From Macrostomum hystrix (lineage: Eukaryota; Animalia; Platyhelminthes), in contig CATNEN010000025.1 of NCBI GenBank assembly GCA_950097015.1, positions 7,254,001-7,318,000 on the forward strand: a DNA stretch of 64,000 bases, in the 5' to 3' direction. Of this stretch, positions 1-55,204 are shown piece by piece (the first letter of the stretch is position 1; each line of letters starts with the position of its first letter). The position numbers were made by a program, and so were the translations under genes. Under the pieces are notes generated by a model. The model was not told the DNA's origin. It was given only the letters and a program-made list of their open reading frames with translations, and ran no database searches.

Positions 1-3000
1 TCCTTCTTCTCTGGCAGTTTCTCGACTCTGGTCAGGGCGCTGCGTGGCAGCTCGCCGCTCTCAAACAGTTTCACACTCTTGCGCAGGCACTGGGCCGGTC
101 GTCTGGTTGTGGTGGTCGCAGGCACAGGCGTTGTGGTCGTCTTTCCTCCCGCCGCCGGCAGAGATGGCATCGGGAAGGTGAGCTTCTCAGCAGCTGGTGT
201 TCCGCGCGATCTGCCAGACGTGCTGGCTGCAGCGCGTGTTGTAGTCGTCAAAACGGTGGTCTTCGGCTCGTGACAGGCCTTTAGCTCAGCCTTGATTTTG
301 GTCGCCTTGCCGGGCTGCGTCTTCACTGTGACGCGAACAAACTTCGGCAGCTTCGGCAGCTCTGGCAGTGCCACGTTCTCTAGATCGCTCGGTCGCAGTG
401 CACTTCCTGGTCGAGGCGTCACCTTGTTCACCTGCACGTACTTCTCTGGCTTGTCCTCGTCGCCGACAAACACGGTCACCTCGCTCACCGAGTCGGGAGT
501 GCTGCTCGAGAGCACCACCTTCATCAGGCTGGCAGTATTTGGCAGTTTAGTTACATCGAAGGTCAGCTGAGTAACACTACCAGGCTGAACAGGTAGTCCG
601 CGACCTCCAGGCAGCACCTCGTTTCTCTCACCGACTGGGACCTCCTTCTTCTCTGGCAGTTTCTCGACTCTGGTCAGGGCGCTGCGTGGCAGCTCGCCGC
701 TCTCAAACAGTTTCACACTCTTGCGCAGGCACTGGGCCGGTCGTCTGGTTGTGGTGGTCGCAGGCACAGGCGTTGTGGTCGTCTTTCCTCCCGCCGCCGG
801 CAGAGATGGCATCGGGAAGGTGAGCTTCTCAGCAGCTGGTGTTCCGCGCGATCTGCCAGACGTGCTGGCTGCAGCGCGTGTTGTAGTCGTCAAAACGGTG
901 GTCTTCGGCTCGTGACAGGCCTTTAGCTCAGCCTTGATTTTGGTCGCCTTGCCGGGCTGCGTCTTCACTGTGACGCGAACAAACTTCGGCAGCTTCGGCA
1001 GCTCTGGCAGTGCCACGTTCTCTAGATCGCTCGGTCGCAGTGCACTTCCTGGTCGAGGCGTCACCTTGTTCACCTGCACGTACTTCTCTGGCTTGTCCTC
1101 GTCGCCGACAAACACGGTCACCTCGCTCACCGAGTCGGGAGTGCTGCTCGAGAGCACCACCTTCATCAGGCTGGCAGTATTTGGCAGTTTAGTTACATCG
1201 AAGGTCAGCTGAGTAACACTACCAGGCTGAACAGGTAGTCCGCGACCTCCAGGCAGCACCTCGTTTCTCTCACCGACTGGGACCTCCTTCTTCTCTGGCA
1301 GTTTCTCGACTCTGGTCAGGGCGCTGCGTGGCAGCTCGCCGCTCTCAAACAGTTTCACACTCTTGCGCAGGCACTGGGCCGGTCGTCTGGTTGTGGTGGT
1401 CGCAGGCACAGGCGTTGTGGTCGTCTTTCCTCCCGCCGCCGGCAGAGATGGCATCGGGAAGGTGAGCTTCTCAGCAGCTGGTGTTCCGCGCGATCTGCCA
1501 GACGTGCTGGCTGCAGCGCGTGTTGTAGTCGTCAAAACGGTGGTCTTCGGCTCGTGACAGGCCTTTAGCTCAGCCTTGATTTTGGTCGCCTTGCCGGGCT
1601 GCGTCTTCACTGTGACGCGAACAAACTTCGGCAGCTTCGGCAGCTCTGGCAGTGCCACGTTCTCTAGATCGCTCGGTCGCAGTGCACTTCCTGGTCGAGG
1701 CGTCACCTTGTTCACCTGCACGTACTTCTCTGGCTTGTCCTCGTCGCCGACAAACACGGTCACCTCGCTCACCGAGTCGGGAGTGCTGCTCGAGAGCACC
1801 ACCTTCATCAGGCTGGCAGTATTTGGCAGTTTAGTTACATCGAAGGTCAGCTGAGTAACACTACCAGGCTGAACAGGTAGTCCGCGACCTCCAGGCAGCA
1901 CCTCGTTTCTCTCACCGACTGGGACCTCCTTCTTCTCTGGCAGTTTCTCGACTCTGGTCAGGGCGCTGCGTGGCAGCTCGCCGCTCTCAAACAGTTTCAC
2001 ACTCTTGCGCAGGCACTGGGCCGGTCGTCTGGTTGTGGTGGTCGCAGGCACAGGCGTTGTGGTCGTCTTTCCTCCCGCCGCCGGCAGAGATGGCATCGGG
2101 AAGGTGAGCTTCTCAGCAGCTGGTGTTCCGCGCGATCTGCCAGACGTGCTGGCTGCAGCGCGTGTTGTAGTCGTCAAAACGGTGGTCTTCGGCTCGTGAC
2201 AGGCCTTTAGCTCAGCCTTGATTTTGGTCGCCTTGCCGGGCTGCGTCTTCACTGTGACGCGAACAAACTTCGGCAGCTTCGGCAGCTCTGGCAGTGCCAC
2301 GTTCTCTAGATCGCTCGGTCGCAGTGCACTTCCTGGTCGAGGCGTCACCTTGTTCACCTGCACGTACTTCTCTGGCTTGTCCTCGTCGCCGACAAACACG
2401 GTCACCTCGCTCACCGAGTCGGGAGTGCTGCTCGAGAGCACCACCTTCATCAGGCTGGCAGTATTTGGCAGTTTAGTTACATCGAAGGTCAGCTGAGTAA
2501 CACTACCAGGCTGAACAGGTAGTCCGCGACCTCCAGGCAGCACCTCGTTTCTCTCACCGACTGGGACCTCCTTCTTCTCTGGCAGTTTCTCGACTCTGGT
2601 CAGGGCGCTGCGTGGCAGCTCGCCGCTCTCAAACAGTTTCACACTCTTGCGCAGGCACTGGGCCGGTCGTCTGGTTGTGGTGGTCGCAGGCACAGGCGTT
2701 GTGGTCGTCTTTCCTCCCGCCGCCGGCAGAGATGGCATCGGGAAGGTGAGCTTCTCAGCAGCTGGTGTTCCGCGCGATCTGCCAGACGTGCTGGCTGCAG
2801 CGCGTGTTGTAGTCGTCAAAACGGTGGTCTTCGGCTCGTGACAGGCCTTTAGCTCAGCCTTGATTTTGGTCGCCTTGCCGGGCTGCGTCTTCACTGTGAC
2901 GCGAACAAACTTCGGCAGCTTCGGCAGCTCTGGCAGTGCCACGTTCTCTAGATCGCTCGGTCGCAGTGCACTTCCTGGTCGAGGCGTCACCTTGTTCACC

Positions 3001-6000: not shown

Positions 6001-9000
6001 CTGGCTGCAGCGCGTGTTGTAGTCGTCAAAACGGTGGTCTTCGGCTCGTGACAGGCCTTTAGCTCAGCCTTGATTTTGGTCGCCTTGCCGGGCTGCGTCT
6101 TCACTGTGACGCGAACAAACTTCGGCAGCTTCGGCAGCTCTGGCAGTGCCACGTTCTCTAGATCGCTCGGTCGCAGTGCACTTCCTGGTCGAGGCGTCAC
6201 CTTGTTCACCTGCACGTACTTCTCTGGCTTGTCCTCGTCGCCGACAAACACGGTCACCTCGCTCACCGAGTCGGGAGTGCTGCTCGAGAGCACCACCTTC
6301 ATCAGGCTGGCAGTATTTGGCAGTTTAGTTACATCGAAGGTCAGCTGAGTAACACTACCAGGCTGAACAGGTAGTCCGCGACCTCCAGGCAGCACCTCGT
6401 TTCTCTCACCGACTGGGACCTCCTTCTTCTCTGGCAGTTTCTCGACTCTGGTCAGGGCGCTGCGTGGCAGCTCGCCGCTCTCAAACAGTTTCACACTCTT
6501 GCGCAGGCACTGGGCCGGTCGTCTGGTTGTGGTGGTCGCAGGCACAGGCGTTGTGGTCGTCTTTCCTCCCGCCGCCGGCAGAGATGGCATCGGGAAGGTG
6601 AGCTTCTCAGCAGCTGGTGTTCCGCGCGATCTGCCAGACGTGCTGGCTGCAGCGCGTGTTGTAGTCGTCAAAACGGTGGTCTTCGGCTCGTGACAGGCCT
6701 TTAGCTCAGCCTTGATTTTGGTCGCCTTGCCGGGCTGCGTCTTCACTGTGACGCGAACAAACTTCGGCAGCTTCGGCAGCTCTGGCAGTGCCACGTTCTC
6801 TAGATCGCTCGGTCGCAGTGCACTTCCTGGTCGAGGCGTCACCTTGTTCACCTGCACGTACTTCTCTGGCTTGTCCTCGTCGCCGACAAACACGGTCACC
6901 TCGCTCACCGAGTCGGGAGTGCTGCTCGAGAGCACCACCTTCATCAGGCTGGCAGTATTTGGCAGTTTAGTTACATCGAAGGTCAGCTGAGTAACACTAC
7001 CAGGCTGAACAGGTAGTCCGCGACCTCCAGGCAGCACCTCGTTTCTCTCACCGACTGGGACCTCCTTCTTCTCTGGCAGTTTCTCGACTCTGGTCAGGGC
7101 GCTGCGTGGCAGCTCGCCGCTCTCAAACAGTTTCACACTCTTGCGCAGGCACTGGGCCGGTCGTCTGGTTGTGGTGGTCGCAGGCACAGGCGTTGTGGTC
7201 GTCTTTCCTCCCGCCGCCGGCAGAGATGGCATCGGGAAGGTGAGCTTCTCAGCAGCTGGTGTTCCGCGCGATCTGCCAGACGTGCTGGCTGCAGCGCGTG
7301 TTGTAGTCGTCAAAACGGTGGTCTTCGGCTCGTGACAGGCCTTTAGCTCAGCCTTGATTTTGGTCGCCTTGCCGGGCTGCGTCTTCACTGTGACGCGAAC
7401 AAACTTCGGCAGCTTCGGCAGCTCTGGCAGTGCCACGTTCTCTAGATCGCTCGGTCGCAGTGCACTTCCTGGTCGAGGCGTCACCTTGTTCACCTGCACG
7501 TACTTCTCTGGCTTGTCCTCGTCGCCGACAAACACGGTCACCTCGCTCACCGAGTCGGGAGTGCTGCTCGAGAGCACCACCTTCATCAGGCTGGCAGTAT
7601 TTGGCAGTTTAGTTACATCGAAGGTCAGCTGAGTAACACTACCAGGCTGAACAGGTAGTCCGCGACCTCCAGGCAGCACCTCGTTTCTCTCACCGACTGG
7701 GACCCTCCTTCTTCTCTGGCAGTTTCTCGACTCTGGTCAGGGCGCTGCGTGGCAGCTCGCCGCTCTCAAACAGTTTCACACTCTTGCGCAGGCACTGGGC
7801 CGGTCGTCTGGTTGTGGTGGTCGCAGGCACAGGCGTTGTGGTCGTCTTTCCTCCCGCCGCCGGCAGAGATGGCATCGGGAAGGTGAGCTTCTCAGCAGCT
7901 GGTGTTCCGCGCGATCTGCCAGACGTGCTGGCTGCAGCGCGTGTTGTAGTCGTCAAAACGGTGGTCTTCGGCTCGTGACAGGCCTTTAGCTCAGCCTTGA
8001 TTTTGGTCGCCTTGCCGGGCTGCGTCTTCACTGTGACGCGAACAAACTTCGGCAGCTTCGGCAGCTCTGGCAGTGCCACGTTCTCTAGATCGCTCGGTCG
8101 CAGTGCACTTCCTGGTCGAGGCGTCACCTTGTTCACCTGCACGTACTTCTCTGGCTTGTCCTCGTCGCCGACAAACACGGTCACCTCGCTCACCGAGTCG
8201 GGAGTGCTGCTCGAGAGCACCACCTTCATCAGGCTGGCAGTATTTGGCAGTTTAGTTACATCGAAGGTCAGCTGAGTAACACTACCAGGCTGAACAGGTA
8301 GTCCGCGACCTCCAGGCAGCACCTCGTTTCTCTCACCGACTGGGACCTCCTTCTTCTCTGGCAGTTTCTCGACTCTGGTCAGGGCGCTGCGTGGCAGCTC
8401 GCCGCTCTCAAACAGTTTCACACTCTTGCGCAGGCACTGGGCCGGTCGTCTGGTTGTGGTGGTCGCAGGCACAGGCGTTGTGGTCGTCTTTCCTCCCGCC
8501 GCCGGCAGAGATGGCATCGGGAAGGTGAGCTTCTCAGCAGCTGGTGTTCCGCGCGATCTGCCAGACGTGCTGGCTGCAGCGCGTGTTGTAGTCGTCAAAA
8601 CGGTGGTCTTCGGCTCGTGACAGGCCTTTAGCTCAGCCTTGATTTTGGTCGCCTTGCCGGGCTGCGTCTTCACTGTGACGCGAACAAACTTCGGCAGCTT
8701 CGGCAGCTCTGGCAGTGCCACGTTCTCTAGATCGCTCGGTCGCAGTGCACTTCCTGGTCGAGGCGTCACCTTGTTCACCTGCACGTACTTCTCTGGCTTG
8801 TCCTCGTCGCCGACAAACACGGTCACCTCGCTCACCGAGTCGGGAGTGCTGCTCGAGAGCACCACCTTCATCAGGCTGGCAGTATTTGGCAGTTTAGTTA
8901 CATCGAAGGTCAGCTGAGTAACACTACCAGGCTGAACAGGTAGTCCGCGACCTCCAGGCAGCACCTCGTTTCTCTCACCGACTGGGACCTCCTTCTTCTC

Positions 9001-12000: not shown

Positions 12001-15000
12001 CTCTGGCTTGTCCTCGTCGCCGACAAACACGGTCACCTCGCTCACCGAGTCGGGAGTGCTGCTCGAGAGCACCACCTTCATCAGGCTGGCAGTATTTGGC
12101 AGTTTAGTTACATCGAAGGTCAGCTGAGTAACACTACCAGGCTGAACAGGTAGTCCCGCGACCTCCAGGCAGCACCTCGTTTCTCTCACCGACTGGGACC
12201 TCCTTCTTCTCTGGCAGTTTCTCGACTCTGGTCAGGGCGCTGCGTGGCAGCTCGCCGCTCTCAAACAGTTTCACACTCTTGCGCAGGCACTGGGCCGGTC
12301 GTCTGGTTGTGGTGGTCGCAGGCACAGGCGTTGTGGTCGTCTTTCCTCCCGCCGCCGGCAGAGATGGCATCGGGAAGGTGAGCTTCTCAGCAGCTGGTGT
12401 TCCGCGCGATCTGCCAGACGTGCTGGCTGCAGCGCGTGTTGTAGTCGTCAAAACGGTGGTCTTCGGCTCGTGACAGGCCTTTAGCTCAGCCTTGATTTTG
12501 GTCGCCTTGCCGGGCTGCGTCTTCACTGTGACGCGAACAAACTTCGGCAGCTTCGGCAGCTCTGGCAGTGCCACGTTCTCTAGATCGCTCGGTCGCAGTG
12601 CACTTCCTGGTCGAGGCGTCACCTTGTTCACCTGCACGTACTTCTCTGGCTTGTCCTCGTCGCCGACAAACACGGTCACCTCGCTCACCGAGTCGGGAGT
12701 GCTGCTCGAGAGCACCACCTTCATCAGGCTGGCAGTATTTGGCAGTTTAGTTACATCGAAGGTCAGCTGAGTAACACTACCAGGCTGAACAGGTAGTCCG
12801 CGACCTCCAGGCAGCACCTCGTTTCTCTCACCGACTGGGACCTCCTTCTTCTCTGGCAGTTTCTCGACTCTGGTCAGGGCGCTGCGTGGCAGCTCGCCGC
12901 TCTCAAACAGTTTCACACTCTTGCGCAGGCACTGGGCCGGTCGTCTGGTTGTGGTGGTCGCAGGCACAGGCGTTGTGGTCGTCTTTCCTCCCGCCGCCGG
13001 CAGAGATGGCATCGGGAAGGTGAGCTTCTCAGCAGCTGGTGTTCCGCGCGATCTGCCAGACGTGCTGGCTGCAGCGCGTGTTGTAGTCGTCAAAACGGTG
13101 GTCTTCGGCTCGTGACAGGCCTTTAGCTCAGCCTTGATTTTGGTCGCCTTGCCGGGCTGCGTCTTCACTGTGACGCGAACAAACTTCGGCAGCTTCGGCA
13201 GCTCTGGCAGTGCCACGTTCTCTAGATCGCTCGGTCGCAGTGCACTTCCTGGTCGAGGCGTCACCTTGTTCACCTGCACGTACTTCTCTGGCTTGTCCTC
13301 GTCGCCGACAAACACGGTCACCTCGCTCACCGAGTCGGGAGTGCTGCTCGAGAGCACCACCTTCATCAGGCTGGCAGTATTTGGCAGTTTAGTTACATCG
13401 AAGGTCAGCTGAGTAACACTACCAGGCTGAACAGGTAGTCCGCGACCTCCAGGCAGCACCTCGTTTCTCTCACCGACTGGGACCTCCTTCTTCTCTGGCA
13501 GTTTCTCGACTCTGGTCAGGGCGCTGCGTGGCAGCTCGCCGCTCTCAAACAGTTTCACACTCTTGCGCAGGCACTGGGCCGGTCGTCTGGTTGTGGTGGT
13601 CGCAGGCACAGGCGTTGTGGTCGTCTTTCCTCCCGCCGCCGGCAGAGATGGCATCGGGAAGGTGAGCTTCTCAGCAGCTGGTGTTCCGCGCGATCTGCCA
13701 GACGTGCTGGCTGCAGCGCGTGTTGTAGTCGTCAAAACGGTGGTCTTCGGCTCGTGACAGGCCTTTAGCTCAGCCTTGATTTTGGTCGCCTTGCCGGGCT
13801 GCGTCTTCACTGTGACGCGAACAAACTTCGGCAGCTTCGGCAGCTCTGGCAGTGCCACGTTCTCTAGATCGCTCGGTCGCAGTGCACTTCCTGGTCGAGG
13901 CGTCACCTTGTTCACCTGCACGTACTTCTCTGGCTTGTCCTCGTCGCCGACAAACACGGTCACCTCGCTCACCGAGTCGGGAGTGCTGCTCGAGAGCACC
14001 ACCTTCATCAGGCTGGCAGTATTTGGCAGTTTAGTTACATCGAAGGTCAGCTGAGTAACACTACCAGGCTGAACAGGTAGTCCGCGACCTCCAGGCAGCA
14101 CCTCGTTTCTCTCACCGACTGGGACCTCCTTCTTCTCTGGCAGTTTCTCGACTCTGGTCAGGGCGCTGCGTGGCAGCTCGCCGCTCTCAAACAGTTTCAC
14201 ACTCTTGCGCAGGCACTGGGCCGGTCGTCTGGTTGTGGTGGTCGCAGGCACAGGCGTTGTGGTCGTCTTTCCTCCCGCCGCCGGCAGAGATGGCATCGGG
14301 AAGGTGAGCTTCTCAGCAGCTGGTGTTCCGCGCGATCTGCCAGACGTGCTGGCTGCAGCGCGTGTTGTAGTCGTCAAAACGGTGGTCTTCGGCTCGTGAC
14401 AGGCCTTTAGCTCAGCCTTGATTTTGGTCGCCTTGCCGGGCTGCGTCTTCACTGTGACGCGAACAAACTTCGGCAGCTTCGGCAGCTCTGGCAGTGCCAC
14501 GTTCTCTAGATCGCTCGGTCGCAGTGCACTTCCTGGTCGAGGCGTCACCTTGTTCACCTGCACGTACTTCTCTGGCTTGTCCTCGTCGCCGACAAACACG
14601 GTCACCTCGCTCACCGAGTCGGGAGTGCTGCTCGAGAGCACCACCTTCATCAGGCTGGCAGTATTTGGCAGTTTAGTTACATCGAATGTCAGCTGAGTAA
14701 CACTACCAGGCTGAACAGGTAGTCCGCGACCTCCAGGCAGCACCTCGTTTCTCTCACCGACTGGGACCTCCTTCTTCTCTGGCAGTTTCTCGACTCTGGT
14801 CAGGGCGCTGCGTGGCAGCTCGCCGCTCTCAAACAGTTTCACACTCTTGCGCAGGCACTGGGCCGGTCGTCTGGTTGTGGTGGTCGCAGGCACAGGCGTT
14901 GTGGTCGTCTTTCCTCCCGCCGCCGGCAGAGATGGCATCGGGAAGGTGAGCTTCTCAGCAGCTGGTGTTCCGCGCGATCTGCCAGACGTGCTGGCTGCAG

Positions 15001-18000: not shown

Positions 18001-18712
18001 CGACTCTGGTCAGGGCGCTGCGTGGCAGCTCGCCGCTCTCAAACAGTTTCACACTCTTGCGCAGGCACTGGGCCGGTCGTCTGGTTGTGGTGGTCGCAGG
18101 CACAGGCGTTGTGGTCGTCTTTCCTCCCGCCGCCGGCAGAGATGGCATCGGGAAGGTGAGCTTCTCAGCAGCTGGTGTTCCGCGCGATCTGCCAGACGTG
18201 CTGGCTGCAGCGCGTGTTGTAGTCGTCAAAACGGTGGTCTTCGGCTCGTGACAGGCCTTTAGCTCAGCCTTGATTTTGGTCGCCTTTCCGGGCTGCGTCT
18301 TCACTGTGACGCGAACAAACTTCGGCTGCTTCGGCAGCTCTGGCAGTGCCACGTTCTCTAGATCGCTCGGTCGCAGTGCACTTCCTGGTCGAGGCGTCAC
18401 CTTGTTCACCTGCACGTACTTCTCTGGCTTGTCCTCGTCGCCGACAAACACGGTTACCTCGCTCACCGAGTCGGGAGTGCTGCTCGAGAGCACCACCTTC
18501 ATCAGGCTGGCAGTATTTGGCAGTTTAGTTACATCGAAGGTCAGCTGAGTAACACTACCAGGCTGAACAGGTAGTCCGCGACCTCCAGGCAGCACCTCGT
18601 TTCTCTCACCGACTGGGACCTCCTTCTTCTCTGGCAGTTTCTCGACTCTGGTCAGGGCGCTGCGTGGCAGCTCGCCGCTCTCAAACAGTTTCACACTCTT
18701 GCTCAGGCACTG
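1..18712 (-). repeat. Coding tandem array A: at least 29 x 642 bp (214 aa)
   Basis: Shadow ORFs recur every 642 nt from 79 to 18057 (29 copies; spacing 643 across the two insertions). Unit CLRKSVKLFESGEL...AELKAC plus a Thr-rich linker. Confidence 0.97.
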
Positions 18713-33700: not shown

Positions 33701-34653
33701 TCGATTAATGCTGACGTCTGTTTCATTCTTACTGACTTTTAGCCTCGAAACTAGAGTCGCCTCGCCTGAACTTTCCTCGTAGATAAATGAGATGATATCG
33801 GCTTGGGGCTGCTCTGCAGTCGACCGGTCATTTCGGATGATGACCTTGCAAATTCGAAAATTGCTCGGAGCTTCAATGATTATTTCGCTTGCTCCCTGCC
33901 TCACAGTTGAGAATTTTTGTTGCGAAATCAATAGAGTTTTCTGATCGGCTGAGTACTCCCTGTTATAGGTGATGCTCTTATACACCTTTACCATGCATGC
34001 CGTTGCTGGAAGCTTTCTGCATCTCTTTTCTTTTAATTTTCCTGGACAGCCGTTGATTTCAAATCGAATCTTCATTGAGCATCTGGCCTGAATTTGAATC
34101 TTCAGCTTTTCTGCTTCGAATGGTCGCACATTCAACTTGACGAAGCAGCGGAGGCAAGAAACGCTTTTCTTTGCATTCAACAGCTGCCAGCCGTTGTTTG
34201 TGAACGCATGCAAGCGAACTGTATCCAGTCCTCTGCGATGGTTGGACTGGATTTCCAATAGCACAGAACTAACTCGGACAACAGAGCGCGAGCGCGACAG
34301 GCTTACCTCAACGACAGTTCGGCCCTCGCTAAGCAAAAATGGGCGCTTGTGTGACTCCAGCAGCTCGGCCCGACGGAACTCATGCGCCGGCACGAAATTC
34401 TCGCTGACTGTTACTTGGCTTGTCCGAATAAGTCCAGAACGAAGCAGCGGACTATTGCAGCTGACTGTGTACTTACTCTCGTCTGTGATTTTAGCCGTGA
34501 AAGGCGTGCTGGCACCACTCCTTGTACAGTTTTCCTCGTCAGAGTCGTCAGCAGCATTGCCCAGACGGCACTGGTGCTTGCCGTCGCAGATCTCCGACTT
34601 AGCAATGCAAAGGCTGGACATGCGGCATTTTTGCTTGAATGCGGGACAACGCT
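1..34653 (-). CDS. Giant exon 15 (at least 34.6 kb): LDLa, discoidin-like domains, 243-aa and 214-aa repeat arrays
   Basis: Acceptor TTTCAG|AG CGT at 34654/34653 fits phase 1. ORF track gives 7533 aa open to 12134. The same repeat protein continues in shifted frames (12189-7690, then ~7700-1) after single C insertions at ~12156 and ~7704. Confidence 0.85.
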
Positions 34654-37600: not shown

Positions 37601-40600
37601 TGAGAAAGTCAGGGCAGATGTACACACCTGTGTGAGCGTATGCCTGCATATAGTATCTGTGTGCGTGTGTGCTCAGGAGTCAGCGAAATGGGCAGAATTG
37701 CCTCCTCACTGGCTGCGGGTCTAGTGTCACTAAATTATGTGCCACTGCCCGCAGTCCTCCTGCAAAAAATAAATAATAATAAATAATAATATCGTGATGC
37801 TTTGGCTGCGCAAAAAATGGCCAAAAATAGTGGAATAACGGGATAGCTTACTCGATTTGAGAATAGCATTTGTAAACAATGTTCTATTTAAGTGCTAAAA
37901 GCAGTAATGTTTTTCTCACCTTCACGGCACAGCGAGTCCGGCCCGGTGTTGAATACAAACGGACTCTGCAGGCGGGCACAGCTGGTGTAGTCGGTGTCCA
38001 CCGGACAGTTGTAAGCTGTACCAAAATGTTATGTTTTATATTTCTGCATACTTATCGATTCGACAGTAGCTAAGAAAATATAGTGTGGAAATAAATTATT
38101 CAATGAGTCAACATCAAAATCATAAAGAAGGAGACTCACGGCAAACTGCCGTCGAACGCCAATCCACGGTGATATTGAGTCCCGAGCACTCGTCAGCGGC
38201 GGCAGCCAACAGGCTGCAGAGACCTTCGCAGGTTGCGGCGTCCTTAACTGACTGGCGGCAGCGGCAGGCCTCGCGGAGGCAGGCGTCGTGAAGGAACTCC
38301 AGGCGGTCTTCATTCAGCATGGCCAGGCAGCCACCGAAGGGTCCTCGCTGATCACGCAGCAGGCCGCAACGGGCGAAGGACAAATCGAAGTTGCTGCGGC
38401 TCTGAACAAGCCAGGTTGTGAATGGTTGATTAGTGAATTTTCAATAGCAAATACAACTGCTCATATTACAATTCCACTGCATATGCCTTTATGCACATTT
38501 TTTTATTGTACCAGTTTGCCATTAATTTTTAAGGAATTTGTTCCATGCCGGTAATTTATTGTTTCAGGTATAAGGTCAGCCTCCGGAATACTTCGCAGAC
38601 CTCATATTCCGCGCATGCCATTTGACCCCGCTGCCTAAATACCAATTTACCATAGACTATTAGTCTAGACCATAGACTATAGCCGTGAAACGCAGAAACC
38701 ACAGACCAAGGAATATACTCGTAACTAGACTGCGCATCCCGCATTTCTTGCCTGGGCTTGATTGACCAAATTACAGTGCAAAGAAATGGCCCCTCGGTCA
38801 CAACACGGAAACGATCCGATAATTGTGCGGGGGCAAACAGATAGGTGCAGGCAAGCTTTTCTTTCCGCCTGCTCTTTTATGTAGCTATATTAAAGTGCTC
38901 TGGGCATCACGTTTGACATCGATACTAGGGACGTGTGCGACTCCACGCTAGAGGACAGTTATAGAATGGGAAGTAGAGATTGGAGTAGAGATTGGGAAGT
39001 AGGGAATGGAGTAGAGAATGGGAAGTAGGAAATGGGAAGTAGGGAATGGGAAGTAGAGATTGGAGTAGAGAATGGGAAGTATGGAATGGGAAGTAGAGAA
39101 TGGAAAGTAGGGAATCGGAAGTAGGGAATTGGAAGTAAGGAATACGAAGTAGAGAATGGGAAGTAGGGAATGGAGTAGAGAATGGGAAGTAGGGAATGGA
39201 GTAGAGAATGGGAAGTAGAGAATGGAGAGTAGAGAATTGGAAGTAGGGAATGGAAAGTAGAGAATTGGAAGTAGGGAATGGGAAGTAGGAATGGGAAGTA
39301 GGAATGGGAAGTAGAGAATGGGAAGTAGAGAATGGGAAGTAGAGAATGGGAAGTAGAGAATGGGAAGTAGGGAATGGGAAGCAGGGAATGGGAAGTAGAG
39401 AATGGAAAGTAGAGAATGGGAAGTAGAGAATGGAGAGTAGGGAATGGAAAATAGGCACAACTTTTTTAACCTCATTCGCAGTCTAGTTATATTTTTTAAT
39501 CTGTGGCTGAAACTAAAGTACTAATTACATGTAAACTATGGCTAGTAGATGCTCTCTATATTGTACGCTTAACGCATTGACGTTTCAACGATCTGCAGCC
39601 AATCCATATTGTCAATAGCGTCTTGTAAGGGACTTCAAATTGAAAAGATTTTAAATATTCTGTTCCCGCAACTTCCGCAACTCCAATGCAGTTAAATTGC
39701 GGATTACCTTGAGACAGGCCTCGTCAAAGTCCGACTCCGGGATGGCCTGTGCGTAGTCGCTGTCAAGCGTCCAACTGCGCCCGAACTCGTCCGGGCTGAG
39801 AGCTAGAAGGCCGCCTGGCGTGCGATAGTCGTCTGTGGCGTCACCGTTGAAATTGCCGCAGAGGCCGCCGAGTGGCGGGCCGCGGCGAGGACGCGTGGCG
39901 TGGATTGTGAGGCGGGTTCCTGAGGTACGGGGGCAGGTTTATTGAATCATTTCAGCTTGCCGATCATCAGAACTCTATTTCTCCCCTGGGGAAATACCAT
40001 GGGGTATTTCAAATACCCACTGCCAACTTCACGACAGCTCCCAAACCGAATAACGGATTTTCCTTAAATCCACCTTATAGGTCAAAACTTTCCACCCTTT
40101 ACAATGAACTAACTTTCAAAGCCGCCCGAGTCGGCATCGTCGAGATATTCAGCGATTCTTGTCGAAGACCCTGGTGACAAGGACAACTGACATTGCTCTG
40201 TATAAACATTTATGGCTTATCCACAATGGATTTGGAATTTGAGCCATGCACAATATGTGGCTTCGGCCCGACAGCTGACATGAAACTAATGCGTAATAGC
40301 AAGAACTGAGCATGAGCGAATTGTGCAAACCTCTATCCCAGAGGACGGACACGCCCAGCAGCAGAAAGTGCAAACCGCCCTGTGCTGGCGAGGCCGTCAG
40401 CACAACTGTCTCTCCGTTAATGTACTGCCGGCCGCTAATTATCCGACCCTGAAGGACGCGAACTTCGCCACCGTTGCCTAGCCGGATCTTCACTAGGCGG
40501 GCGCACACGGAAGGCCGGCTGCCGCAGGCGACGCTACGGCTGGTGACGCGCAGCTCCGGCAGCTGCAGTAAGAGAGTCTCGCGTGCGCCAGCGTAGTAGC

Positions 40601-43600
40601 GAAACGGCCGACCGTCGAAGCTGACATAGTAGCCGTCTCCGAATACCCGACAGCGGCCGCGGCAGGCAGCAGCGGAGCCGGCGGTGATCTTTTCCAGCCA
40701 ACGACCGCCGGAGCACACGCGCGTCCTGCACTGAGCGGTGAGGGTCGAACCTGGTGGAAGTTCGCGACTGCCATAGCGACATGGACAGTCGGCGTGCTTC
40801 ACACACTGACCCTGCGGAGACGAATGATCCGATTTATTTAGTCCATTTGGACTGCGTTAATTTTGCAATTCGCATCAATGAGACTTTCAACTCACCGCAG
40901 CGGTGGCGTACAGCCCGCTGGGACAGCGGCAATGTTCTTCGGTTCCAGCGCCGGTGTTGCAGCCTGCCGCGTTGTTACCATCGTCTGGATCTTCGCATCG
41001 GCGCGGTCGGCACTCGCCAGGCAGGGCGCGCCGCCAGGCCTGATTTTTCGGACAGGCGACTCGACTACGAGCCACTGCTGATAGTGCTGCCCGGATCGCG
41101 GGCCGGCAGACGATTAGGCCGTTCTGACACTTGCTGAAATTTTGATTCGCTCGGTGATGATAAAAGCTTTAGTTCTTACCTGGGGCGTAGCAGGGGGGCG
41201 AGGCCCTGGTATTGGCGCCCCAGAGGCACGGCGCCCCTAGAAAAAAATCCCTTCCTTCCCTCACAACTCACCATTTTTCGTCGCTACGCGAAAATTCCTC
41301 GTCGGGTTGTCGCTGCTTGCCAGTTAGAGAATCGAAGCACGTGCATTGGGATCTAGCCACACACCTGCCGTCGCTCAGTAGGTAAAGGCCACGTGGACAC
41401 TGGCAGCCGAAATAGCAGCCGCTGGGACAACGATCCGGTCTGGACAAGCTGGCGCAGGTGGTCTGGCAGGTGTTGGCACACAGGCGGAATATGGAGCCAC
41501 CACTGGGGCAGGATAGCAGAGCTGGAAATTAAATTCGAAGGTATTTAATGATTAAAATTACAAGTTTGTGCATAAAAACTCATACCTGAATATAGGACCG
41601 CAGGAAATAAGGATCTCTACAGGTACCACAAGCACAAGGCTCTCTATCGCTGACACAAGGCTCTCTACATCTGACACAAGGCTCTCTATCGCTGACACAA
41701 GGCTCTCTACATCTGACACAAGGTTCTCTATCGCTAACACAAGGCTCTCTACATCTGACACAAGTCTCTCTATCGCTGACGCAAGTCTCTCTATCGCTGA
41801 CACAAGGCCCTTTACATCTGACACAAGGCTCTCTATCGCTGACACAAGGCTCTCTATCGCTGACACAAGGCTCTCTATCGCTGACACAAGGTTCTCTACT
41901 ATTAACGTATAGCACTTGAATATTGATCACTATTTAGTCACTGGAACGGCTAAGTGCATACTACGAACCACTGGAGCAATAGCAATAGATAGCCGATAGC
42001 CAATGAGTAAATGAACTCAGTATCAAACAGGCTGCTCAGCTCACAGCACTCCTTGAGATGCGACAGGAGTCGCCAATGGATCCTGTAGCCAGATCTGGCG
42101 CAAAGCCGCATTGCGTTGAACGCGATGTAGCAGATGCTGTCGGTATGGCGCGCCGCCTCGCAGTTACGCACAAACGGCTGCAGATTCTCAGTCTGGGCGC
42201 AGAGTCTGAACTGACCGCTGTGCTGGAACAGATCGTAACAGGTGCGCACAGTTTCCCTCGAGATGCCAACTCGTTGCGGCCATCCTTCTGACAGCAATTC
42301 TAGTCCGGTCGCCAAGTAGGAGCGGGCAACTGACAGAGAATCGGCAGCGACGCTTCCCCGCCTCGGCCACAGGTCGTTTTCACTGGCGCCGTCGTAGCGG
42401 CCGCATAGGCCTCGCAAGCGTCGGGCTCCGCGTAGTCGCTTGCTGGCGGCCAGGTCGACTATGGCGCCGTTGAAATCAAGGCGCAGCAGGTCGGCTATGC
42501 GCAGGTGAATGTAGTGGCTGGTGACCCGGTGTAGCGAAAAGTCAAGGCTGAGCCGCAGATGCTGCCCAATGGCTCTGGAAGGCATTGGTAACGCGGGCTG
42601 CCTTGTGACTTGACTAAGGTTTAGGCAACCATGCAAAAAAGTAAATTGCCTAAATGTTAAAAATAAGTATCTGCTAGTTTCTGCATCCCTTGGTTTAATT
42701 TAAACTTACCTGGCGATAAATATTTGTCTCAATAATTCAAGAAAACTCTTAGACCTTGCTTTTGCTTTTGCATTTCACGATGGAAATTTATCGCAAAACT
42801 AAACATCAGCACCAGTTGGTGGCGATCGCTTTGTAATAATAACTAATAACAATAAAATGTAGAATCTGACACAACTCACAGTCTCTGACTGCGGTCGCCC
42901 AATTGGATGACAAAATCTCCAGCCTGGTCAGAACTCGACGACCAGTAGACCAGGACCCGCTGGCCCTGCCAGGAGACATCTAGACGCGCCGGATCTGTCC
43001 AGCTGAACTTCACAGCTAGCGGTATCTCGGAGTCTTGATCGGGCTTCAGGATTTCGTGGAAAAAATACAACAGGGAACATGAAAAACAAGAAAAATTCCT
43101 TATTTAAGTATCAAAATAAGTTAGCTTCCTTAAAAGTAGGACTACTATTAATTAGAACTACTGTTAGTCAATTCTAATATTTAGGCTTGATCAGTGAAAT
43201 GGGAGAAATTCGCGTCAGGCTGTCCATAGTGACCTAGTTCCACCTGTTGTAGCCCTTAAAGGTCCAGCAGTCCATCTAAATAAAGGTAGGTGACCACGGA
43301 AGACGGAGATGATGCAGGCACATTCGGGTGACATGCAGATAAATTTTGAAGGCTCGGCAAGGCCGCACTGAGGCGCAGTGCTAATTCGTGTATAGGGGTG
43401 TATGAAAAACACTAGCGCTTATGGGAAAAATCAGACCTTCGGCCAGAACAAGACTTGATTCTTGTTTCAGAAGATGTGCAAAAAGTTGGCCCATGTTCTT
43501 GAGTTTCGTGTGCTTTCGTTGCTCCGTTCGGGTGCAGTACAGAAAATTGTCTCCAGTGAGGAAATCCCCCCTGTGTAGTTCTACCGTAAAATGTGCTTAA

Positions 43601-46040
43601 TAGTTCGTATTCTAAGACTGCTTTGTTCCACAGCCCACTGTATCTAGCGTGTTCCTATAACTATGATAGAAAAATCACGAGGCTTGTGCACGAGGCTTGT
43701 GGAGTGCTTCCAAATTTAATCTACGAGCCCGTACATTAGAATAGAATGTACATTGGGCAGCCCCAGTTTAGGCCACAAAACAAATGCTTATCTCTCTTCT
43801 GTCCTCACGCGGGAGATGAATGTACATCCGCTGAATTTTAATCTACATTGCACAAGTTGTTTATCTGCCGAGCCGACACGCGCTAACCAGCTAACCTTGT
43901 ACTGACTTTATGCCATCCTATATATAGTTGGGAATGAACACTATAAGTAAGATGAAAAAGCTATATATCTATAGTCGTCTAACCTATCTGTTTATCTTAA
44001 TATACCACGAAAAAAATTGTAATCGCAGTCATGAACCTCAGTGACGTAACATAAACAAGCCTCACCTCAACCAGGTAATACTGATTGCTACTGTCCAAAA
44101 AGCTGATCTTCTGCCCGTCGAAGGTGACAACCTGGCCAGGCGAGACGTGGCAGACTCTGCCGCAGTCGGTGCTGGCGCAGCGCCAATTGTTGTTGCCAAG
44201 ACAGGAGCTTCGCGCCGAGAGAAAGAGAATGCTTAGCTGTACATCTTAATAATAATAGTATTCAAATGAGCGCGGGGCACTAAAGCATCATTTGGTGAAA
44301 GTAGACACGCAGCCAGTGAGGAGGCAACTCTGCTCCACTGACTCCTGAGCACACACGCTCACAGGTGTACAGGTTGGCCCCAAGCCTTCTCTCCGCGTCT
44401 GCGCCCCAAATGAATGTGGCCTCGCCGCGGAATCGAGTTCAGGGACCTAGAAGCCAGAGGCAAACGCTCTGCCACTCACCCCCTAGCTGTGAGTGGCAGA
44501 ATATTTACCATTGAATTTTTCCCTGCTTTATTGTTTGCTCAAATCGGAAGCGCAAAACGCACGATGATTTTTTTCACACCAGTTGTGAAAACTTTAGAAT
44601 ACGAGTGTATATGTTGTAAAACTGAGCTGGCTATTTACCAGGTCTGGCAGCCTTTAGTGAATCGCTCGCCCAGGTGGTAGATCCGGTTGCCATGACGACA
44701 CGGACATTCGGCAGCCTCGACGCAGCGGCCACGACCGTCTAGTAGGCGCGGCGGGACGCAGGCGCACAGCGGGGCGAAAGTACACATCAGCGGGGGCAGG
44801 CGGCGGAGAGCGGCGCAGCGGTCGGGACACCGGCGGTGGCAGAGGCTGTGCACTGACCAGCCTTTTAAGTGAAACAGTTTGGGATAAGAAGTCAGAATAT
44901 AAATCGGAACATTCGTAACATAAAGATCCAACTTTATTGAATCGCACTGACCATCTGTGCAGCTGACGCGGGCGCTGTTGCACTGCTGGCCGCGGGCGCT
45001 GAGCAGGAACCGCTGAGCAGTAAGGTAGGCGCCAGCTGAGCCGGTCACCTCGACGAAGGGGTCGCGCAGGCAGCCGCGGCCCAGCCGACTGTCTGGCCGG
45101 TCCAATTTACCGCAGGGGCCGCGGTTCGCCGGTCGCAGCCGGCGTTGTTGGCGCGCAGTTGCCCCCGGAGGCCGCTGTCCGGCGCACCAGCCGCTAGTCT
45201 GGCCGGCCGTCGAGTCTAGCAGCAGAGCCAGGAAGCCGTCGTCGGACCAGCGCAGGTGTACTGCGGTGCCGGACAAGTGCAGCGAGTGCTGCCGTCCGTT
45301 GTCGAAGCTGCGCAGCAGCAGCGGCACGGAGGCGGGCAGGCGATTGTCAGCGGCGTCGCCGTCTTCGTCGCCTAGGAGCAGCTCAGCCACAGTCTGGGTG
45401 TCATTACGGCCGGCAATGCCCAGCTGAAGGACTGTCAGGCTTCGGCCGCGGATGCGAACCAGATTGTCGGTGGGGCAGTGACGGACGCCGCCGAAGTGAA
45501 TCAAGATTTCCTGCATTGTGGAGCATTTTTTGTTTTGTTTAAGCGCTTCGAAAGATAATTAATGAATAACTTTCAATGCCATATAGTGCACTCGTAGACA
45601 CACAACCAAAAAGTGGTAACTGGTGGGGCTAACATTCGGTCGATTTATCAGAGCAAGTGTAAGCTGGTCGAATCAAATCAATTTCGAATTCTGAGCTAGA
45701 AGGAAAACTATAAAAATTATAACTCTACCTTCTGACAGGCGTCATCGCTGACTCCATCTTCGCCGCACTTGCCGCCGGCTCCGACGGTGCGCACGTCGAT
45801 TCTCCAGCTCAGCACCTCGGAGCTGAAGCTGGCCAGCGGAAGCTCGTCTTGCCCGGCGCCGACTGTCGGCCAGAACTGATCAGTCCAGGCTCCGCTGAAG
45901 TCCAGCAGGTGTCCCAATCCGGGCTGCACGCAATAGCTGAACTGCGTGCCGTCATTGTTGCCAGTCGCCACAGCGCCTGCCCAAGCTAGGAAGGCGAGCA
46001 GAAGTACGGCGGAAGCCAGTGGCAGCAGACGCCGCTTCAT
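1..46040 (-). CDS. Giant secreted VWD/C8/TIL-LDLa-discoidin repeat glycoprotein (gel-forming mucin / SCO-spondin-like; candidate adhesive protein); 15 exons, 3' end beyond the window
   Basis: Exons joined by hand: 46040-45729, 45510-44952, 44861-44639, 44207-44066, 43043-42880, 42601-42045, 41077-40896, 40811-40331, 39919-39708, 38401-38140, 38015-37920, 35789-35660, 35369-35281, 35089-34976, then 34653 to <1. All have GT..AG boundaries and matching phases (3523 nt = 1174 codons + 1 nt, completed by AG at 34653). Motifs seen: signal peptide, GLCGRYDG and GLCGNFNGD (VWD), C8 and TIL cysteine patterns, two LDLa modules. Confidence 0.88.
18830..32585 (-). repeat. Coding tandem array B: 19 x 729 bp (243 aa)
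   Basis: Plus-strand shadow ORFs recur every 729 nt from 19509 to 31902, plus a divergent terminal copy near 18.8-19.4 kb. The protein unit CTKKMAFDSNVL...LEVKVC plus an Arg/Thr linker repeats almost perfectly. Confidence 0.97.
34976..35789 (-). CDS. Exons 12-14 (35789-35660; 35369-35281; 35089-34976): end of TIL, VWC-like Cys segment, LDL-receptor class A module
   Basis: Translation DCQC...CRYRGAVYGTGDSAKLGCRQCICRDGNWKNC, then LDLa CTGHSFACRSSGSCLHRSKVCDGVADCADGSDEASC. Confidence 0.85.
35426..35597. repeat. 12-bp minisatellite (CCGGTCTCAGAG/A), ~14 copies, in an intron
   Basis: Directly visible. Lies inside the intron 35659-35370. Confidence 0.95.
36840..37790 (+). mobile_element. tRNA-derived SINE copy 1, interrupted by a foldback element
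   Basis: A-box TGGCAGAGCGG at ~36850 and B-box GTTCGATTC at 36895. The body resumes at 37467 (...CGCGGCGAGGCCACATT..TGGGGCGCAGCCGCGGAGAGAAGGC...) and ends in an AAT-rich tail. The body matches four other copies in the window. Confidence 0.8.
36904..37466. mobile_element. Non-autonomous foldback/MITE-like DNA transposon, 563 bp
   Basis: Termini GGTTTACTCCCGATTCGCCGAATCCCG and CGGGATTCGGCGAATCGGGAGTAAACC are inverted. The arms are built of ~15-bp CCGATTCGCCGAA subrepeats around an AT-rich spacer. Flanked by GTTCGATTC (36895-36903) and GTTCGATCC (37467-37475). Confidence 0.85.
37920..41077 (-). CDS. Exons 7-11 (41077-40896; 40811-40331; 39919-39708; 38401-38140; 38015-37920): TIL, VWD3, C8, TIL
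   Basis: Translation CRVFGDGYYVSFDGRPF, LGGLCGNFNGDATDDYRTPGG...EFGRSW, C8 RCGLL..GPFGGC...DACLREAC...VDWRSTAVC, TIL CPVDTDYTSC...CREDCQC. All GT-AG with matching phases. Confidence 0.85.
38965..39449. repeat. Purine-rich 7/14-bp minisatellite (GGGAAGTAGAGAAT)
   Basis: Directly visible; intronic. Confidence 0.95.
41630..41898. repeat. 21-bp minisatellite (ACAAGGCTCTCTATCGCTGAC), ~12 copies
   Basis: Directly visible; intronic. Confidence 0.95.
42045..44207 (-). CDS. Exons 4-6 (44207-44066; 43043-42880; 42601-42045): VWD2 and C8
   Basis: Translation CSCLGNNNWRCASTDCGRVCHVSPGQVVTFDG ... LRGLCGRYDGASENDL ... FRLCAQTENLQPFVRNC...IHWR. Phases 2-0-2-1 are consistent. Confidence 0.82.
43185..43590. 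mobile_element. Dispersed ~400-bp repeat, copy 1 (probable DNA-transposon remnant)
   Basis: Colinear and highly similar to 57445-57870 (GGCTTGATCAGTGAAAT...GTGACCTAGTTCCACCTGTTGTAGCCCTT...CCCCCTG.GTAGTTCTAC.G). Confidence 0.6.
44268..44485 (-). mobile_element. tRNA-derived SINE copy 2 (internally deleted)
   Basis: Minus strand reads GGGGGTGAGTGGCAGAGCG (A-box-like) ... AACTCGATTCCGCGGCGAGGCCACATT..TGGGGCGCAG...CACCAAATGATG tail. Confidence 0.75.
44639..45510 (-). CDS. Exons 2-3 (45510-44952; 44861-44639): degenerate VWD1 and TIL domain
   Basis: Acceptor TGCAG|GAA. The 90-nt intron 44951-44862 joins GAT G|GC TGG. TIL pattern CHRRCPDRC...C..LCAC...LLDGRGRCVEAAECPC. Confidence 0.8.
45729..46040 (-). 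CDS. Exon 1: signal peptide and start of first VWD-like domain
   Basis: ATG at 46040 gives MKRRLLPLASAVLLLAFLAWAGAVATG (basic n-region, hydrophobic h-region, small-residue cleavage site). Donor AAG|GTAGAG at 45728. Confidence 0.8.
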
Positions 46041-52306: not shown

Positions 52307-52834
52307 CTCAAACCTCTCTTTAATCCCGCAAGGTATTGTAAGGTTGCCGACCCTGCCCCAGTGCTAGATAATTCTGGCACACATAGAAGCCTGTGAAAGC
52401 TGTTATAAATTGTGAACTTTTATACACGTACGAGCGTAATAAAGTCCCAACACAAAAGTTTTGAGACAAAAAATCGTCACATTTTTTAGTTCGCATACAT
52501 TCTCTCTCACGAGTTTGAGCCTCAGCGCGTGTACTTTGAGCTTTCACTGTTGCTGACCGCTGCTATTAAAAGAGGAATCATTTAGTTATCGCGACGGATG
52601 CTGGGATTAAGCGTTTTGCACTATTCACTGCCGATCAGTAGTCCACAGCTATTCATCATCATTGAAACTGTGAGCTGAACTGTTCTGTAAATTTGATGCT
52701 CTACAATCGCTGCTGGAATAACTCAAAGGCCTGCACTGTGTGTTTCGTTCGAGGCGGTGTCATTATTCCGACCAGCAACAAAAGTGCATACTGGACTTTT
52801 GTTAATTGAGCATTTAATAGGGTGTCATTTAGAC

Positions 52835-55145: not shown

Positions 55146-55204
55146 TGGATGAGGGCCAATTAGAGCTTCGGGAGTCAGTTACAGCCTTAAGCAAAATGAG
55201 AACC

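What the first reader, a model, noticed from the sequence alone, without database searches (positions are those of the whole stretch)
1..46040. Titin-scale secreted protein (>12,700 aa) with one coding exon of at least 34.6 kb: candidate bioadhesive 'glue' gene
Seen: the 14 small exons splice in phase onto a single uninterrupted exon covering the whole first half of the window. The head is signal peptide, 3x VWD/C8/TIL and 2x LDLa; the body is two long homogeneous arrays (19 x 243 aa and at least 29 x 214 aa). Established: multi-VWD-C8-TIL heads mediate polymerisation in gel-forming mucins, VWF and SCO-spondin, but their bodies are normally PTS low-complexity repeats, not ~200-aa folded-domain repeats. 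Inference: VWD-type domains with two central blocks of large repeats is the layout I recall for the Macrostomum lignano adhesive protein ap2. This may be that gene, an orthologue or an undescribed paralogue. The ORF track shows only disconnected fragments, so automated annotation would probably fragment it.
Basis: partly seen in the sequence, partly recalled or inferred. Interest (0 to 1): 0.75.

Follow-up and report, generated by a model that had tools for sequence, protein, structure and literature searches.

The report
Flatworm glue gene ap2, full length

Summary
The minus strand of window 1-46040 holds most of one gene of about 55 kb. It has 14 small GT-AG exons (46040-34976), then a giant exon that starts at 34653 and runs 2.4 kb past the window start.

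One claim fails. The giant exon is not uninterrupted: two 1-base insertions (CC to CCC, near 7703 and 12155) split it into three reading frames. These are probably polishing errors of a long-read assembly.

The genome's size and contig count match the published M. hystrix assembly. The head, both repeat units and the tail are collinear with database fragments of M. lignano Mlig-ap2, at 46-88% identity. The gene is single copy. It is therefore the M. hystrix orthologue, Mhtx-ap2, which was already published as N- and C-terminal fragments with tail in situ signal and an RNAi no-attachment phenotype.

Additions made here:
- repeat counts and an estimated length of about 15,400 aa;
- a C-terminal cystine knot, which completes a mucin/VWF-type polymerisation layout;
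- a confident predicted galactose-binding-like (discoidin/CBM32) jelly-roll fold for the repeat domain, present in 56 copies, each of the 52 array copies followed by a Thr-rich cationic linker.

First-stage notes on the adjacent window cover the same gene's continuation.

The parts
45729..46040 (-). Exon 1: start codon at 46040-46038, signal peptide (basic n-region, Leu/Ala-rich core), start of the first VWD-like module
   Evidence: tblastn of P0001 aa 1-96; splice scan, donor GTAGAG; translation
44639..45510 (-). Exon 2: rest of the first D-like module, with a TIL-like end
   Evidence: P0001 aa 96-373, 64% identity; Pfam TIL 21.9 bits, below cut-off; MUC2 match E 2e-5 to the TIL part
42045..44207 (-). 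Exons 3-5 (44207-44066, 43043-42880, 42574-42045): second VWD plus weak C8
   Evidence: P0001 aa 375-654, 68-81% identity; Pfam VWD 21.7 and C8 17.9 bits in exon 5; splice scan
40896..41521 (-). Exons 6-7 (41521-41272, 41133-40896): TIL and a Cys-rich spacer
   Evidence: Pfam TIL 45 bits; splice scan
37920..40811 (-). Exons 8-11 (40811-40331, 39919-39708, 38401-38140, 38015-37920): third VWD, C8, start of a Cys-rich TIL-like part
   Evidence: Pfam VWD 25.4 and 25.0 bits, C8 37.8 bits; P0001 aa 815-1161, 68-81% identity
34976..35789 (-). Exons 12-14 (35789-35660, 35369-35281, 35089-34976): Cys-rich part and first LDLa
   Evidence: Pfam Ldl_recept_a 43 bits; splice scan
1..34653 (-). In-window part of the giant exon. 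The acceptor precedes 34653 (intron phase 1) and the exon continues to about -2378 outside the window.
   Evidence: Splice scan; stop-free pieces; donor CCA|GTAAGT in L007
34526..34648 (-). Second LDLa
   Evidence: Pfam 19.7 bits, below cut-off, with the typical Cys/acidic pattern in the translation
32777..34459 (-). Four diverged single copies (D1-D4) of the repeat domain, each bounded by Cys
   Evidence: Alignment A1, 17-27% identity to the RP-1 domain
18710..32518 (-). RP-1 array: 19 units of 243 aa, each a 147-aa jelly-roll domain plus a 96-aa Thr/Ser-rich basic linker
   Evidence: 126/147 identity to the Mlig RP-1 domain
1..18709 (-). RP-2 array: 29 complete units of 214 aa in the window (33 in all), each a 153-aa domain plus a 61-aa linker
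   Evidence: 115/153 identity to the Mlig RP-2 domain
7702..7705 (-). Frame break 1: one extra C in a CC run (+ strand); the unit 7063-7705 is 643 bp
12154..12157 (-). Frame break 2: one extra C in a CC run (+ strand); the unit 11558-12200 is 643 bp

Best explanation
The locus is the single-copy orthologue of Macrostomum lignano adhesion protein 2 (ap2) in a second Macrostomum species, almost certainly M. hystrix (Mhtx-ap2). It encodes a secreted protein of about 15,400 aa.

Shown here:
- An N-terminal signal peptide and a head homologous to the D1-D2-D'D3 assemblies of VWF and gel-forming mucins, followed by two LDLa domains.
- A body of 56 copies of one roughly 150-aa domain (4 diverged copies, 19 in RP-1, 33 in RP-2). 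The domain is predicted with high confidence to be a galactose-binding-like (discoidin/CBM32/DOC) jelly roll.
- After each of the 52 array copies, a 60-96-aa Thr/Ser/Pro-rich, strongly basic linker; the four diverged copies are joined by only short spacers.
- A tail of TSP-1 and TIL domains, a short PTS stretch, and a C-terminal cystine knot.

Taken from published experiments: ap2 is made in the adhesive gland cells of the tail plate, stored in the rim of the glue vesicles, O-glycosylated (PNA-reactive Gal-beta1,3-GalNAc) and left on the substrate. Its knock-down abolishes attachment, in M. hystrix as well.

Inferred: the molecule polymerises end to end as mucins and VWF do, with tail-to-tail dimers through the cystine knot and head-to-head links through the D assemblies. 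This would give long glycosylated cationic strings of lectin-fold beads that coat the surface and offer many weak contacts. The cationic ap1 then ties them to the animal.

The two frame breaks are most likely residual single-base errors of the canu/Arrow/Pilon assembly inside near-identical repeats, not real lesions.
For: Identity:
- P0001 matches at E 6e-233 and is printed as Mlig-ap2 in the 2019 supplement.
- P0003 and P0004 carry the two antibody epitopes of that paper.
- The exons and the tail are collinear with the M. lignano fragments.
- RP-1 and RP-2 domains are 86% and 75% identical between the species, while RP-1 versus RP-2 within the species is 25%.
- The gene is single copy.
- The genome statistics equal those of the M. 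hystrix assembly.
- A three-VWD head is published for M. hystrix ap2a.

Architecture:
- Pfam hits for the head, body start and tail.
- Cys_knot at 29.9 bits against a cut-off of 24.
- P0001 against PDB: VWF residues 660-1133 align to P0001 664-1136; MUC5AC, MUC2 and FCGBP match at E 1e-56 to 1e-76.

Fold:
- AlphaFold2 with 11 sequences gives pLDDT 89.4 and pTM 0.85.
- VIA-align gives Z 10-11 with 120-130 of 147 residues aligned, and the best-scoring rows are mostly of the CBM32 / F5/8-C / DOC kind.
- Foldseek agrees at TM 0.5-0.57.

Linkers: 34-42% Thr+Ser and pI about 12.

Function: PMC6410801 and PMC8621496.

Frame breaks: both are CC to CCC changes in units that are otherwise identical to their neighbours. 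All three pieces stay stop-free for 4.5 to 22 kb. The assembly method is given.
Against: - The species name rests on matching assembly statistics and on the published domain pattern. The M. hystrix transcripts OK245468 and OK245469 could not be compared (not in the protein database hits, not in the supplements).
- No read or RNA data were available, so the frame breaks could be real.
- The cystine knot has no significant match among solved structures by sequence; the best relevant hit is bursicon at E 0.07.
- No VWD4 or VWC domains of true gel-forming mucins were found in the tail.
- Polymerisation and any ligand of the jelly-roll domain are untested.
- Free galactose and PNA did not disturb attachment in M. 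lignano, which argues against a simple galactose-lectin step.
- The perfect identity of the units may be partly an effect of polishing with multiply mapped reads.
Confidence: 0.88

Rival explanations
1. The two frame breaks are real, so in the sequenced inbred line the gene encodes a truncated protein (head, RP-1 and about 10 RP-2 units, with no tail) or is a young pseudogene.
For: The assembled sequence does contain the two insertions, and no read data were checked.
Against: The gene is single copy, and ap2 knock-down abolishes attachment in M. hystrix, so a working copy is expected. About 14.5 kb downstream of the first break remains stop-free in the shifted frames, and the tail exons are intact and 66-82% identical to M. 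lignano. Both changes are one-base extensions of a homopolymer inside identical repeats, which is the typical residual error of canu/Arrow/Pilon assemblies. M. lignano database models show similar out-of-frame stretches.
Confidence: 0.07
2. It is a paralogue of ap2, or a general gel-forming mucin used for mucus or another secretion, and not the glue gene tested by RNAi.
For: The head and the cystine knot are of the mucin/VWF type, and expression was not examined here.
Against: Head exon 2 and the unique region occur only once in the genome. Both repeat types are specific orthologues of Mlig-ap2 RP-1 and RP-2. In 1.84 billion representative proteins, the domain was found only in M. lignano ap2 fragments and in five short unnamed fragments.
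Confidence: 0.03
3. The window is from another Macrostomum species or a close macrostomid, not M. hystrix. The gene would still be an ap2 orthologue.
For: No sequence named M. hystrix was compared directly.
Against: The genome's 220,453,370 bases in exactly 42 contigs match the published figures of about 220 Mb and 42 contigs. The extra N-terminal VWD module is reported for M. hystrix and M. spirale.
Confidence: 0.05

Closest known systems
[quoted passage not shown] 2019, PMC6410801)
   Same: The order of parts is the same: signal peptide, VWD/C8/TIL, LDLa, a unique region, RP-1 array, RP-2 array, TIL/TSP-1 tail. Identity by part is 46-83% for the head exons, 51-53% for the unique region, 86% for the RP-1 domain, 75% for the RP-2 domain and 66-82% for the tail. 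The conserved linker motif EK(L/V)TFPMPS is shared.
   Different: Unit sizes and numbers differ: 19 x 243 and 33 x 214 aa here, against 21 x 255 and 25 x 221 aa. The linkers diverge more than the domains (about 64-73% identity, with indels). The antibody epitopes are not conserved. The estimated length is about 15,400 aa against 14,794 aa.
Mhtx-ap2a / Mhtx-ap2b transcripts of M. hystrix (OK245468, OK245469; Pjeta et al. 2021, PMC8621496)
   Same: Probably the same gene. The published domain pattern (three VWD, extra TIL before the LDLa domains, a TIL/TSP-1 tail) fits this locus. The published tail in situ signal and RNAi loss of attachment apply to it.
   Different: The transcripts cover only the two ends, and the authors state that the repeat core could not be assembled. 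The window and its flank give the core, the exon structure and the cystine knot. The sequences could not be compared here.
Gel-forming mucins and von Willebrand factor (MUC2, MUC5AC, MUC5B, VWF, FCGBP)
   Same: The N-terminal D assemblies are homologous and nearly co-numbered with VWF. The VWD ends carry GLCG-type motifs. There are Thr/Ser/Pro-rich O-glycosylated stretches and a C-terminal cystine knot.
   Different: The centre is not a plain PTS region but 52 folded jelly-roll domains alternating with short PTS-like basic linkers. The tail has TSP-1 and TIL domains instead of D4, VWC or A domains. The product is a substrate glue, not mucus or a clotting factor.
SCO-spondin
   Same: It uses the same set of domains: VWD, C8, TIL, LDLa, TSP-1 and a C-terminal cystine knot.
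   Different: SCO-spondin has long TSP-1/LDLa arrays and no jelly-roll repeat arrays. No direct sequence comparison was made here, so this resemblance is from general knowledge.
Discoidin / F5/8 type C / CBM32 / DOC (galactose-binding domain-like fold)
   Same: The predicted fold of the repeat domain matches at Z 10-11, rmsd about 3 A, over 120-130 of 147 residues. Many of the matched modules bind galactose or GalNAc.
   Different: There is no sequence-level membership: no Pfam hit, and 8-19% identity in the structural alignments. A single Cys sits at each end of the domain. The ligand, if any, is unknown.

Membership tests
Macrostomum ap2 adhesive proteins | N-terminal signal peptide, VWD/C8/TIL modules and LDLa domain(s) | tested here: met
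   Pfam by exon; collinear with P0001. The first VWD module is supported only by homology to Mlig-ap2.
Macrostomum ap2 adhesive proteins | Two central tandem arrays, RP-1 then RP-2, homologous in sequence to those of Mlig-ap2 | tested here: met
   19 x 243 aa and 33 x 214 aa. Domain identity to Mlig units is 126/147 and 115/153. The Mlig fragments carry the published epitopes.
Macrostomum ap2 adhesive proteins | C-terminal region with TIL and TSP-1 domains | tested here: met
   Found in L007, outside the window; collinear with P0002.
Macrostomum ap2 adhesive proteins | Expression in adhesive gland cells and loss of attachment on RNAi | not testable with these tools
   Published for M. hystrix ap2 fragments (PMC8621496). 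That those fragments map to this locus is inferred from single-copy status.
Macrostomum ap2 adhesive proteins | PNA-reactive O-glycosylation (Gal-beta1,3-GalNAc) | not testable with these tools
   The linkers are 34-42% Thr+Ser. PNA staining of M. hystrix vesicles is published.
Gel-forming mucin / VWF superfamily | N-terminal D1-D2-D'D3 assemblies | tested here: met
   The orthologue P0001 matches VWF, MUC5AC, MUC2 and FCGBP at E 1e-56 to 1e-76, with VWF 660-1133 aligned to 664-1136. The window's exons are collinear with P0001. The joined window head itself was not searched.
Gel-forming mucin / VWF superfamily | C-terminal cystine knot | tested here: met
   Pfam Cys_knot at 29.9 bits, cut-off 24, for L007:963-1325:-. 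UniRef names the M. lignano orthologue 'CTCK domain-containing'. There is no significant PDB sequence match.
Gel-forming mucin / VWF superfamily | Long central low-complexity PTS domain; C-terminal D4 and VWC domains | tested here: not met
   The centre is folded domains alternating with 61-96-aa linkers, and only about 500 aa of PTS-like sequence follow RP-2. No VWD or VWC hit was found in the tail pieces.
Gel-forming mucin / VWF superfamily | Disulfide-linked multimers | not testable with these tools
   Inferred from the domains only.
Discoidin / F5/8 type C / CBM32 | Galactose-binding-like beta jelly-roll fold | tested here: met
   The model has pLDDT 89.4, VIA Z 10-11 and Foldseek TM 0.5-0.57. 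This is a predicted structure, not a solved one.
Discoidin / F5/8 type C / CBM32 | Sequence match to the family profile | tested here: not met
   No Pfam family above noise for the repeat units. The Atlas gave no hit.

The most novel reading that the evidence does not exclude
ap2 is a mucin/VWF-style end-to-end disulfide polymer whose 56 lectin-fold (CBM32/discoidin-like) beads bind glycans: either the Gal-beta1,3-GalNAc on the neighbouring linkers of other ap2 chains, or sugars of the conditioning film on submerged surfaces. The glue would then set by multivalent protein-glycan cross-links, a curing principle not so far described for an animal adhesive.
Probability: 0.12. Interest if true: 0.6.

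Novelty: already known. Interest (0 to 1): 0.3.

Why it matters
Flatworm ap2 is the surface-binding half of one of the few temporary underwater glues that has been dissected genetically. The authors of the comparative study wrote that the repeat cores of ap2 outside M. lignano could not be assembled and needed good genomes. This locus supplies a second full-length ap2.

- It shows that the two repeat types are old (they are shared by two distant Macrostomum species), while unit number, linker length and linker sequence change and the units are homogenised within a species.
- The cystine knot together with the D assemblies gives a testable polymerisation model.
- The confident jelly-roll model gives a defined, small, expressible domain for binding and structural work.

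None of this changes what kind of gene it is.

Tried and rejected
- The two Mlig-ap2 antibody epitopes were not found in the window, even with 6 substitutions allowed. That ruled out M. lignano itself.
- Pfam on the repeat units gave only sub-threshold noise, summed over the repeats (PDZ_Tricorn, TcfC and others); these hits were rejected.
- The ESM Atlas gave nothing for the repeat domain.
- A single-sequence AlphaFold model was poor, at pLDDT 60.
- The word search with one RP-1 unit found nothing in the 134-425 aa length range.
- In the full-library search, the bacterial hits P0005, P0007, P0008 and P0013 cover only part of the profile in repetitive beta-strand proteins. They were rejected as relatives after reading P0005, P0007 and P0008.
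- The supplements of PMC8621496 hold no sequences.
- P0015-P0017 do not reach the junction between RP-2 and the tail. The exon or exons there rest on open frames, Pfam and splice motifs only.
Full report
**What is in the sequence**

On the minus strand, the first 34.7 kb of the window are open, but not in one frame. There are three stop-free pieces: 12137-34747 (7537 codons), 7693-12231 (1513 codons), and a piece from beyond the window start to 7736 (2578 codons in the window, 3372 with the flank).

- The DNA is two tandem arrays of near-identical units: period 729 bp between about 18.7 and 32.5 kb, and period 642 bp from the window start to 18.7 kb.
- Anchoring every 642-bp unit showed 30 units of 642 bp and two of 643 bp (7063-7705 and 11558-12200).
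- Each odd unit has one extra C in a CC run of the + strand, at 7702-7705 and 12154-12157, and is otherwise identical to its neighbours.
- These two insertions are the only reason for the frame changes.

**Exon model**

The M. lignano protein P0001 (see below) aligns collinearly to 46040-34977 in 14 blocks and then runs into the giant exon. A scan for GT/GC...AG pairs that keep the frame and best fit P0001 gave canonical GT-AG borders for all 14 introns.

- The exons are 46040-45729, 45510-44639, 44207-44066, 43043-42880, 42574-42045, 41521-41272, 41133-40896, 40811-40331, 39919-39708, 38401-38140, 38015-37920, 35789-35660, 35369-35281 and 35089-34976. The giant exon then starts at 34653, in phase 1.
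- The head is 3892 nt (about 1297 aa).
- Pfam by exon gave VWD (exons 5, 8, 9), C8 (exon 10 strong, exon 5 weak), TIL (exon 6 strong, exon 2 weak) and LDLa (exon 14 strong, start of the giant exon weak).
- The first D-like module has no VWD hit of its own.

**The body**

- After the second LDLa come four diverged, Cys-bounded domains, D1-D4 (34459-32777).
- RP-1 follows: 19 units of 243 aa (32518-18710). Eighteen units differ by at most two residues; the last has a shortened linker.
- RP-2 follows: 214-aa units, 29 complete in the window and 33 in all.
- Each unit is a 147-153-aa domain with one Cys at each end, followed by a linker of 96 or 61 aa that is 34-42% Thr+Ser with pI about 12.
- D1-D4 and the RP-1 and RP-2 domains align with each other at 17-27% identity. 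The protein therefore has 56 copies of one domain.

**The rest of the gene**

The window is G000 contig 25, 7254001-7318000, and I fetched the 40 kb before it.

- The giant exon ends at a CCA|GTAAGT donor 2378 bases before the window start. It is followed by an intron of about 103 nt with a TTTTAG acceptor. A further 63-nt in-frame intron just upstream is possible.
- Downstream exons encode two TSP-1 domains, a TIL, about 500 aa of Pro/Thr/Ser-rich sequence with three IRGTAAPD motifs, three TSP-1, a TIL, more TSP-1, a TIL, and a last exon that Pfam calls Cys_knot (29.9 bits, cut-off 24).
- The stop codon (TGA) lies 9038-9040 bases before the window start.
- The gene spans about 55 kb and encodes roughly 15,400 aa (1297 + about 12,340 + about 1,800; my estimate).
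- A LINE-type element lies beyond it.

**Identity**

- The word search with the unique region returned one protein: M. lignano BOX15_Mlig010037g1 (P0001, 2093 aa, E 6e-233, 51% identity).
- The same residues are printed as Mlig-ap2 in the supplement of Wunderer et al. 2019.
- The tail returned BOX15_Mlig021174g1 (P0002, 66% identity), collinear over eight blocks at up to 82% identity.
- A profile of the six domain copies, run against 1.84 billion representative proteins, found 13 proteins. Four are M. lignano ap2 fragments (P0003, P0001, P0004, P0006). Five are short unnamed fragments that align over the whole domain. Four are bacterial repeat proteins that match only part of the profile, which I reject as relatives.
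- P0004 carries the published anti-ap2 epitope of RP-1, and P0003 carries that of RP-2 25 times.
- Between the two species the RP-1 domain is 126/147 identical and the RP-2 domain 115/153. The linkers are 60/94 and 44/60 identical, with length changes. RP-1 versus RP-2 within this genome is only 37/147.
- The two repeat types therefore predate the split of the species, and units are homogenised within each array.
- Head exon 2 and the unique region occur once in the genome, so this is the orthologue.

**Species**

G000 has 220,453,370 bases in 42 contigs. Wiberg et al. 2023 report about 220 Mb in 42 contigs for M. hystrix. Pjeta et al. 2021 report an extra N-terminal VWD-TIL-C8 module for M. 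hystrix ap2a, describe ap2a and ap2b fragments only, and show tail in situ signal and complete loss of attachment on ap2 RNAi in that species. I could not compare OK245468 and OK245469 directly.

**Frame breaks**

The assembly was made with canu and polished with Arrow and Pilon. One-base homopolymer errors that short reads cannot correct inside identical repeats are expected from such a pipeline; that expectation is my own knowledge. Everything downstream remains open and conserved, the gene is single copy, and it is needed for attachment. I therefore rate the breaks as errors, at about 0.9.

**Fold and mechanism**

- With the 11-sequence alignment A2, AlphaFold2 gave pLDDT 89.4 and pTM 0.85 for the RP-1 domain; the single-sequence model reached only pLDDT 60.
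- Foldseek ranked DOC, CBM32, discoidin and neuropilin b1 domains first, at TM 0.5-0.57.
- The independent VIA-align search gave Z 10-11 over 120-130 residues, and the best-scoring rows are mostly of that fold.
- The orthologous head matches VWF, MUC5AC, MUC2 and FCGBP D assemblies nearly residue number for residue number.
- Together with the cystine knot, this gives the layout that polymerises mucins and VWF.
- None of the three flatworm papers read here mentions a cystine knot or a discoidin-like fold.
- Polymerisation and any glycan binding remain inference. Free galactose and PNA had no effect on attachment in M. lignano.

**Verdict**

The gene is already known in kind and, from fragments, in this species. 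The increments made here are the full-length structure, the cystine knot and the fold.

Noticed in passing
window 48482-49303 (-): An open frame with a strong Pfam Tmem26 match (145.7 bits, C-terminal half of the profile). It is probably an exon of a TMEM26-like gene just upstream of ap2.
   Followed up: partly
window 58116-58829 and 60348-61184 (-): Two exons of a class I/II aminotransferase gene (Pfam 89.8 and 37.8 bits). A 16-bp x 68 minisatellite (58853-59952) lies in the intron between them.
   Followed up: partly
window 50779-52302 (+): A 1.5-kb CT-rich minisatellite (30-bp unit x 50) is open in all three + frames and has strong GC and AT skew. The long ORFs there are by-products of the repeat, and the 'extensin' hit is far below cut-off.
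   Followed up: partly
window 36911-37083 and 37324-37459: Two 15-bp minisatellite arrays in intron 11 of ap2 appear, by eye, to be reverse complements of each other. They lie about 240 bp apart, so the pre-mRNA or the DNA could form a long hairpin there.
   Followed up: no
window 35425-35597, 38964-39455, 41633-41898; also 52805-53123, 54717-55149, 55854-56723, 60732-61141, 61721-62979: Minisatellites are unusually dense in the ap2 introns and in the intergenic DNA (units of 12 to 42 bp, 12 to 40 copies). The 12-bp array of intron 12 has look-alikes on contig 38.
   Followed up: no
L005:1958-5818 (-), that is 14-18 kb before the window start: A LINE-type retrotransposon with endonuclease, reverse transcriptase and RNase H open frames lies just downstream of the ap2 stop codon.
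   Followed up: no
P0003, P0004, P0006, P0016, P0017 (M. lignano database proteins): The public M. lignano models of ap2 are fragments, automatically named 'Microtubule-associated protein futsch', 'Protein abnormal spindle', 'C2 domain-containing' and 'AHD domain-containing'. P0003 and P0004, the two that were read, contain out-of-frame stretches, so the same assembly problem exists there.
   Followed up: partly
P0009, P0010, P0011, P0012, P0014: Five unnamed proteins of 154-191 aa, the three traced being on short (0.7-1.2 kb) Logan or ENA contigs, align over the whole repeat domain. They share both boundary Cys and a Thr run after the second Cys, at 23-28% identity. They are probably ap2-like repeat units of other flatworms. 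Their source could not be traced.
   Followed up: partly
window 19509-32447 (+): A ladder of identical 181-aa ORFs runs on the strand opposite RP-1. They are antisense by-products of the repeat, not genes.
   Followed up: yes
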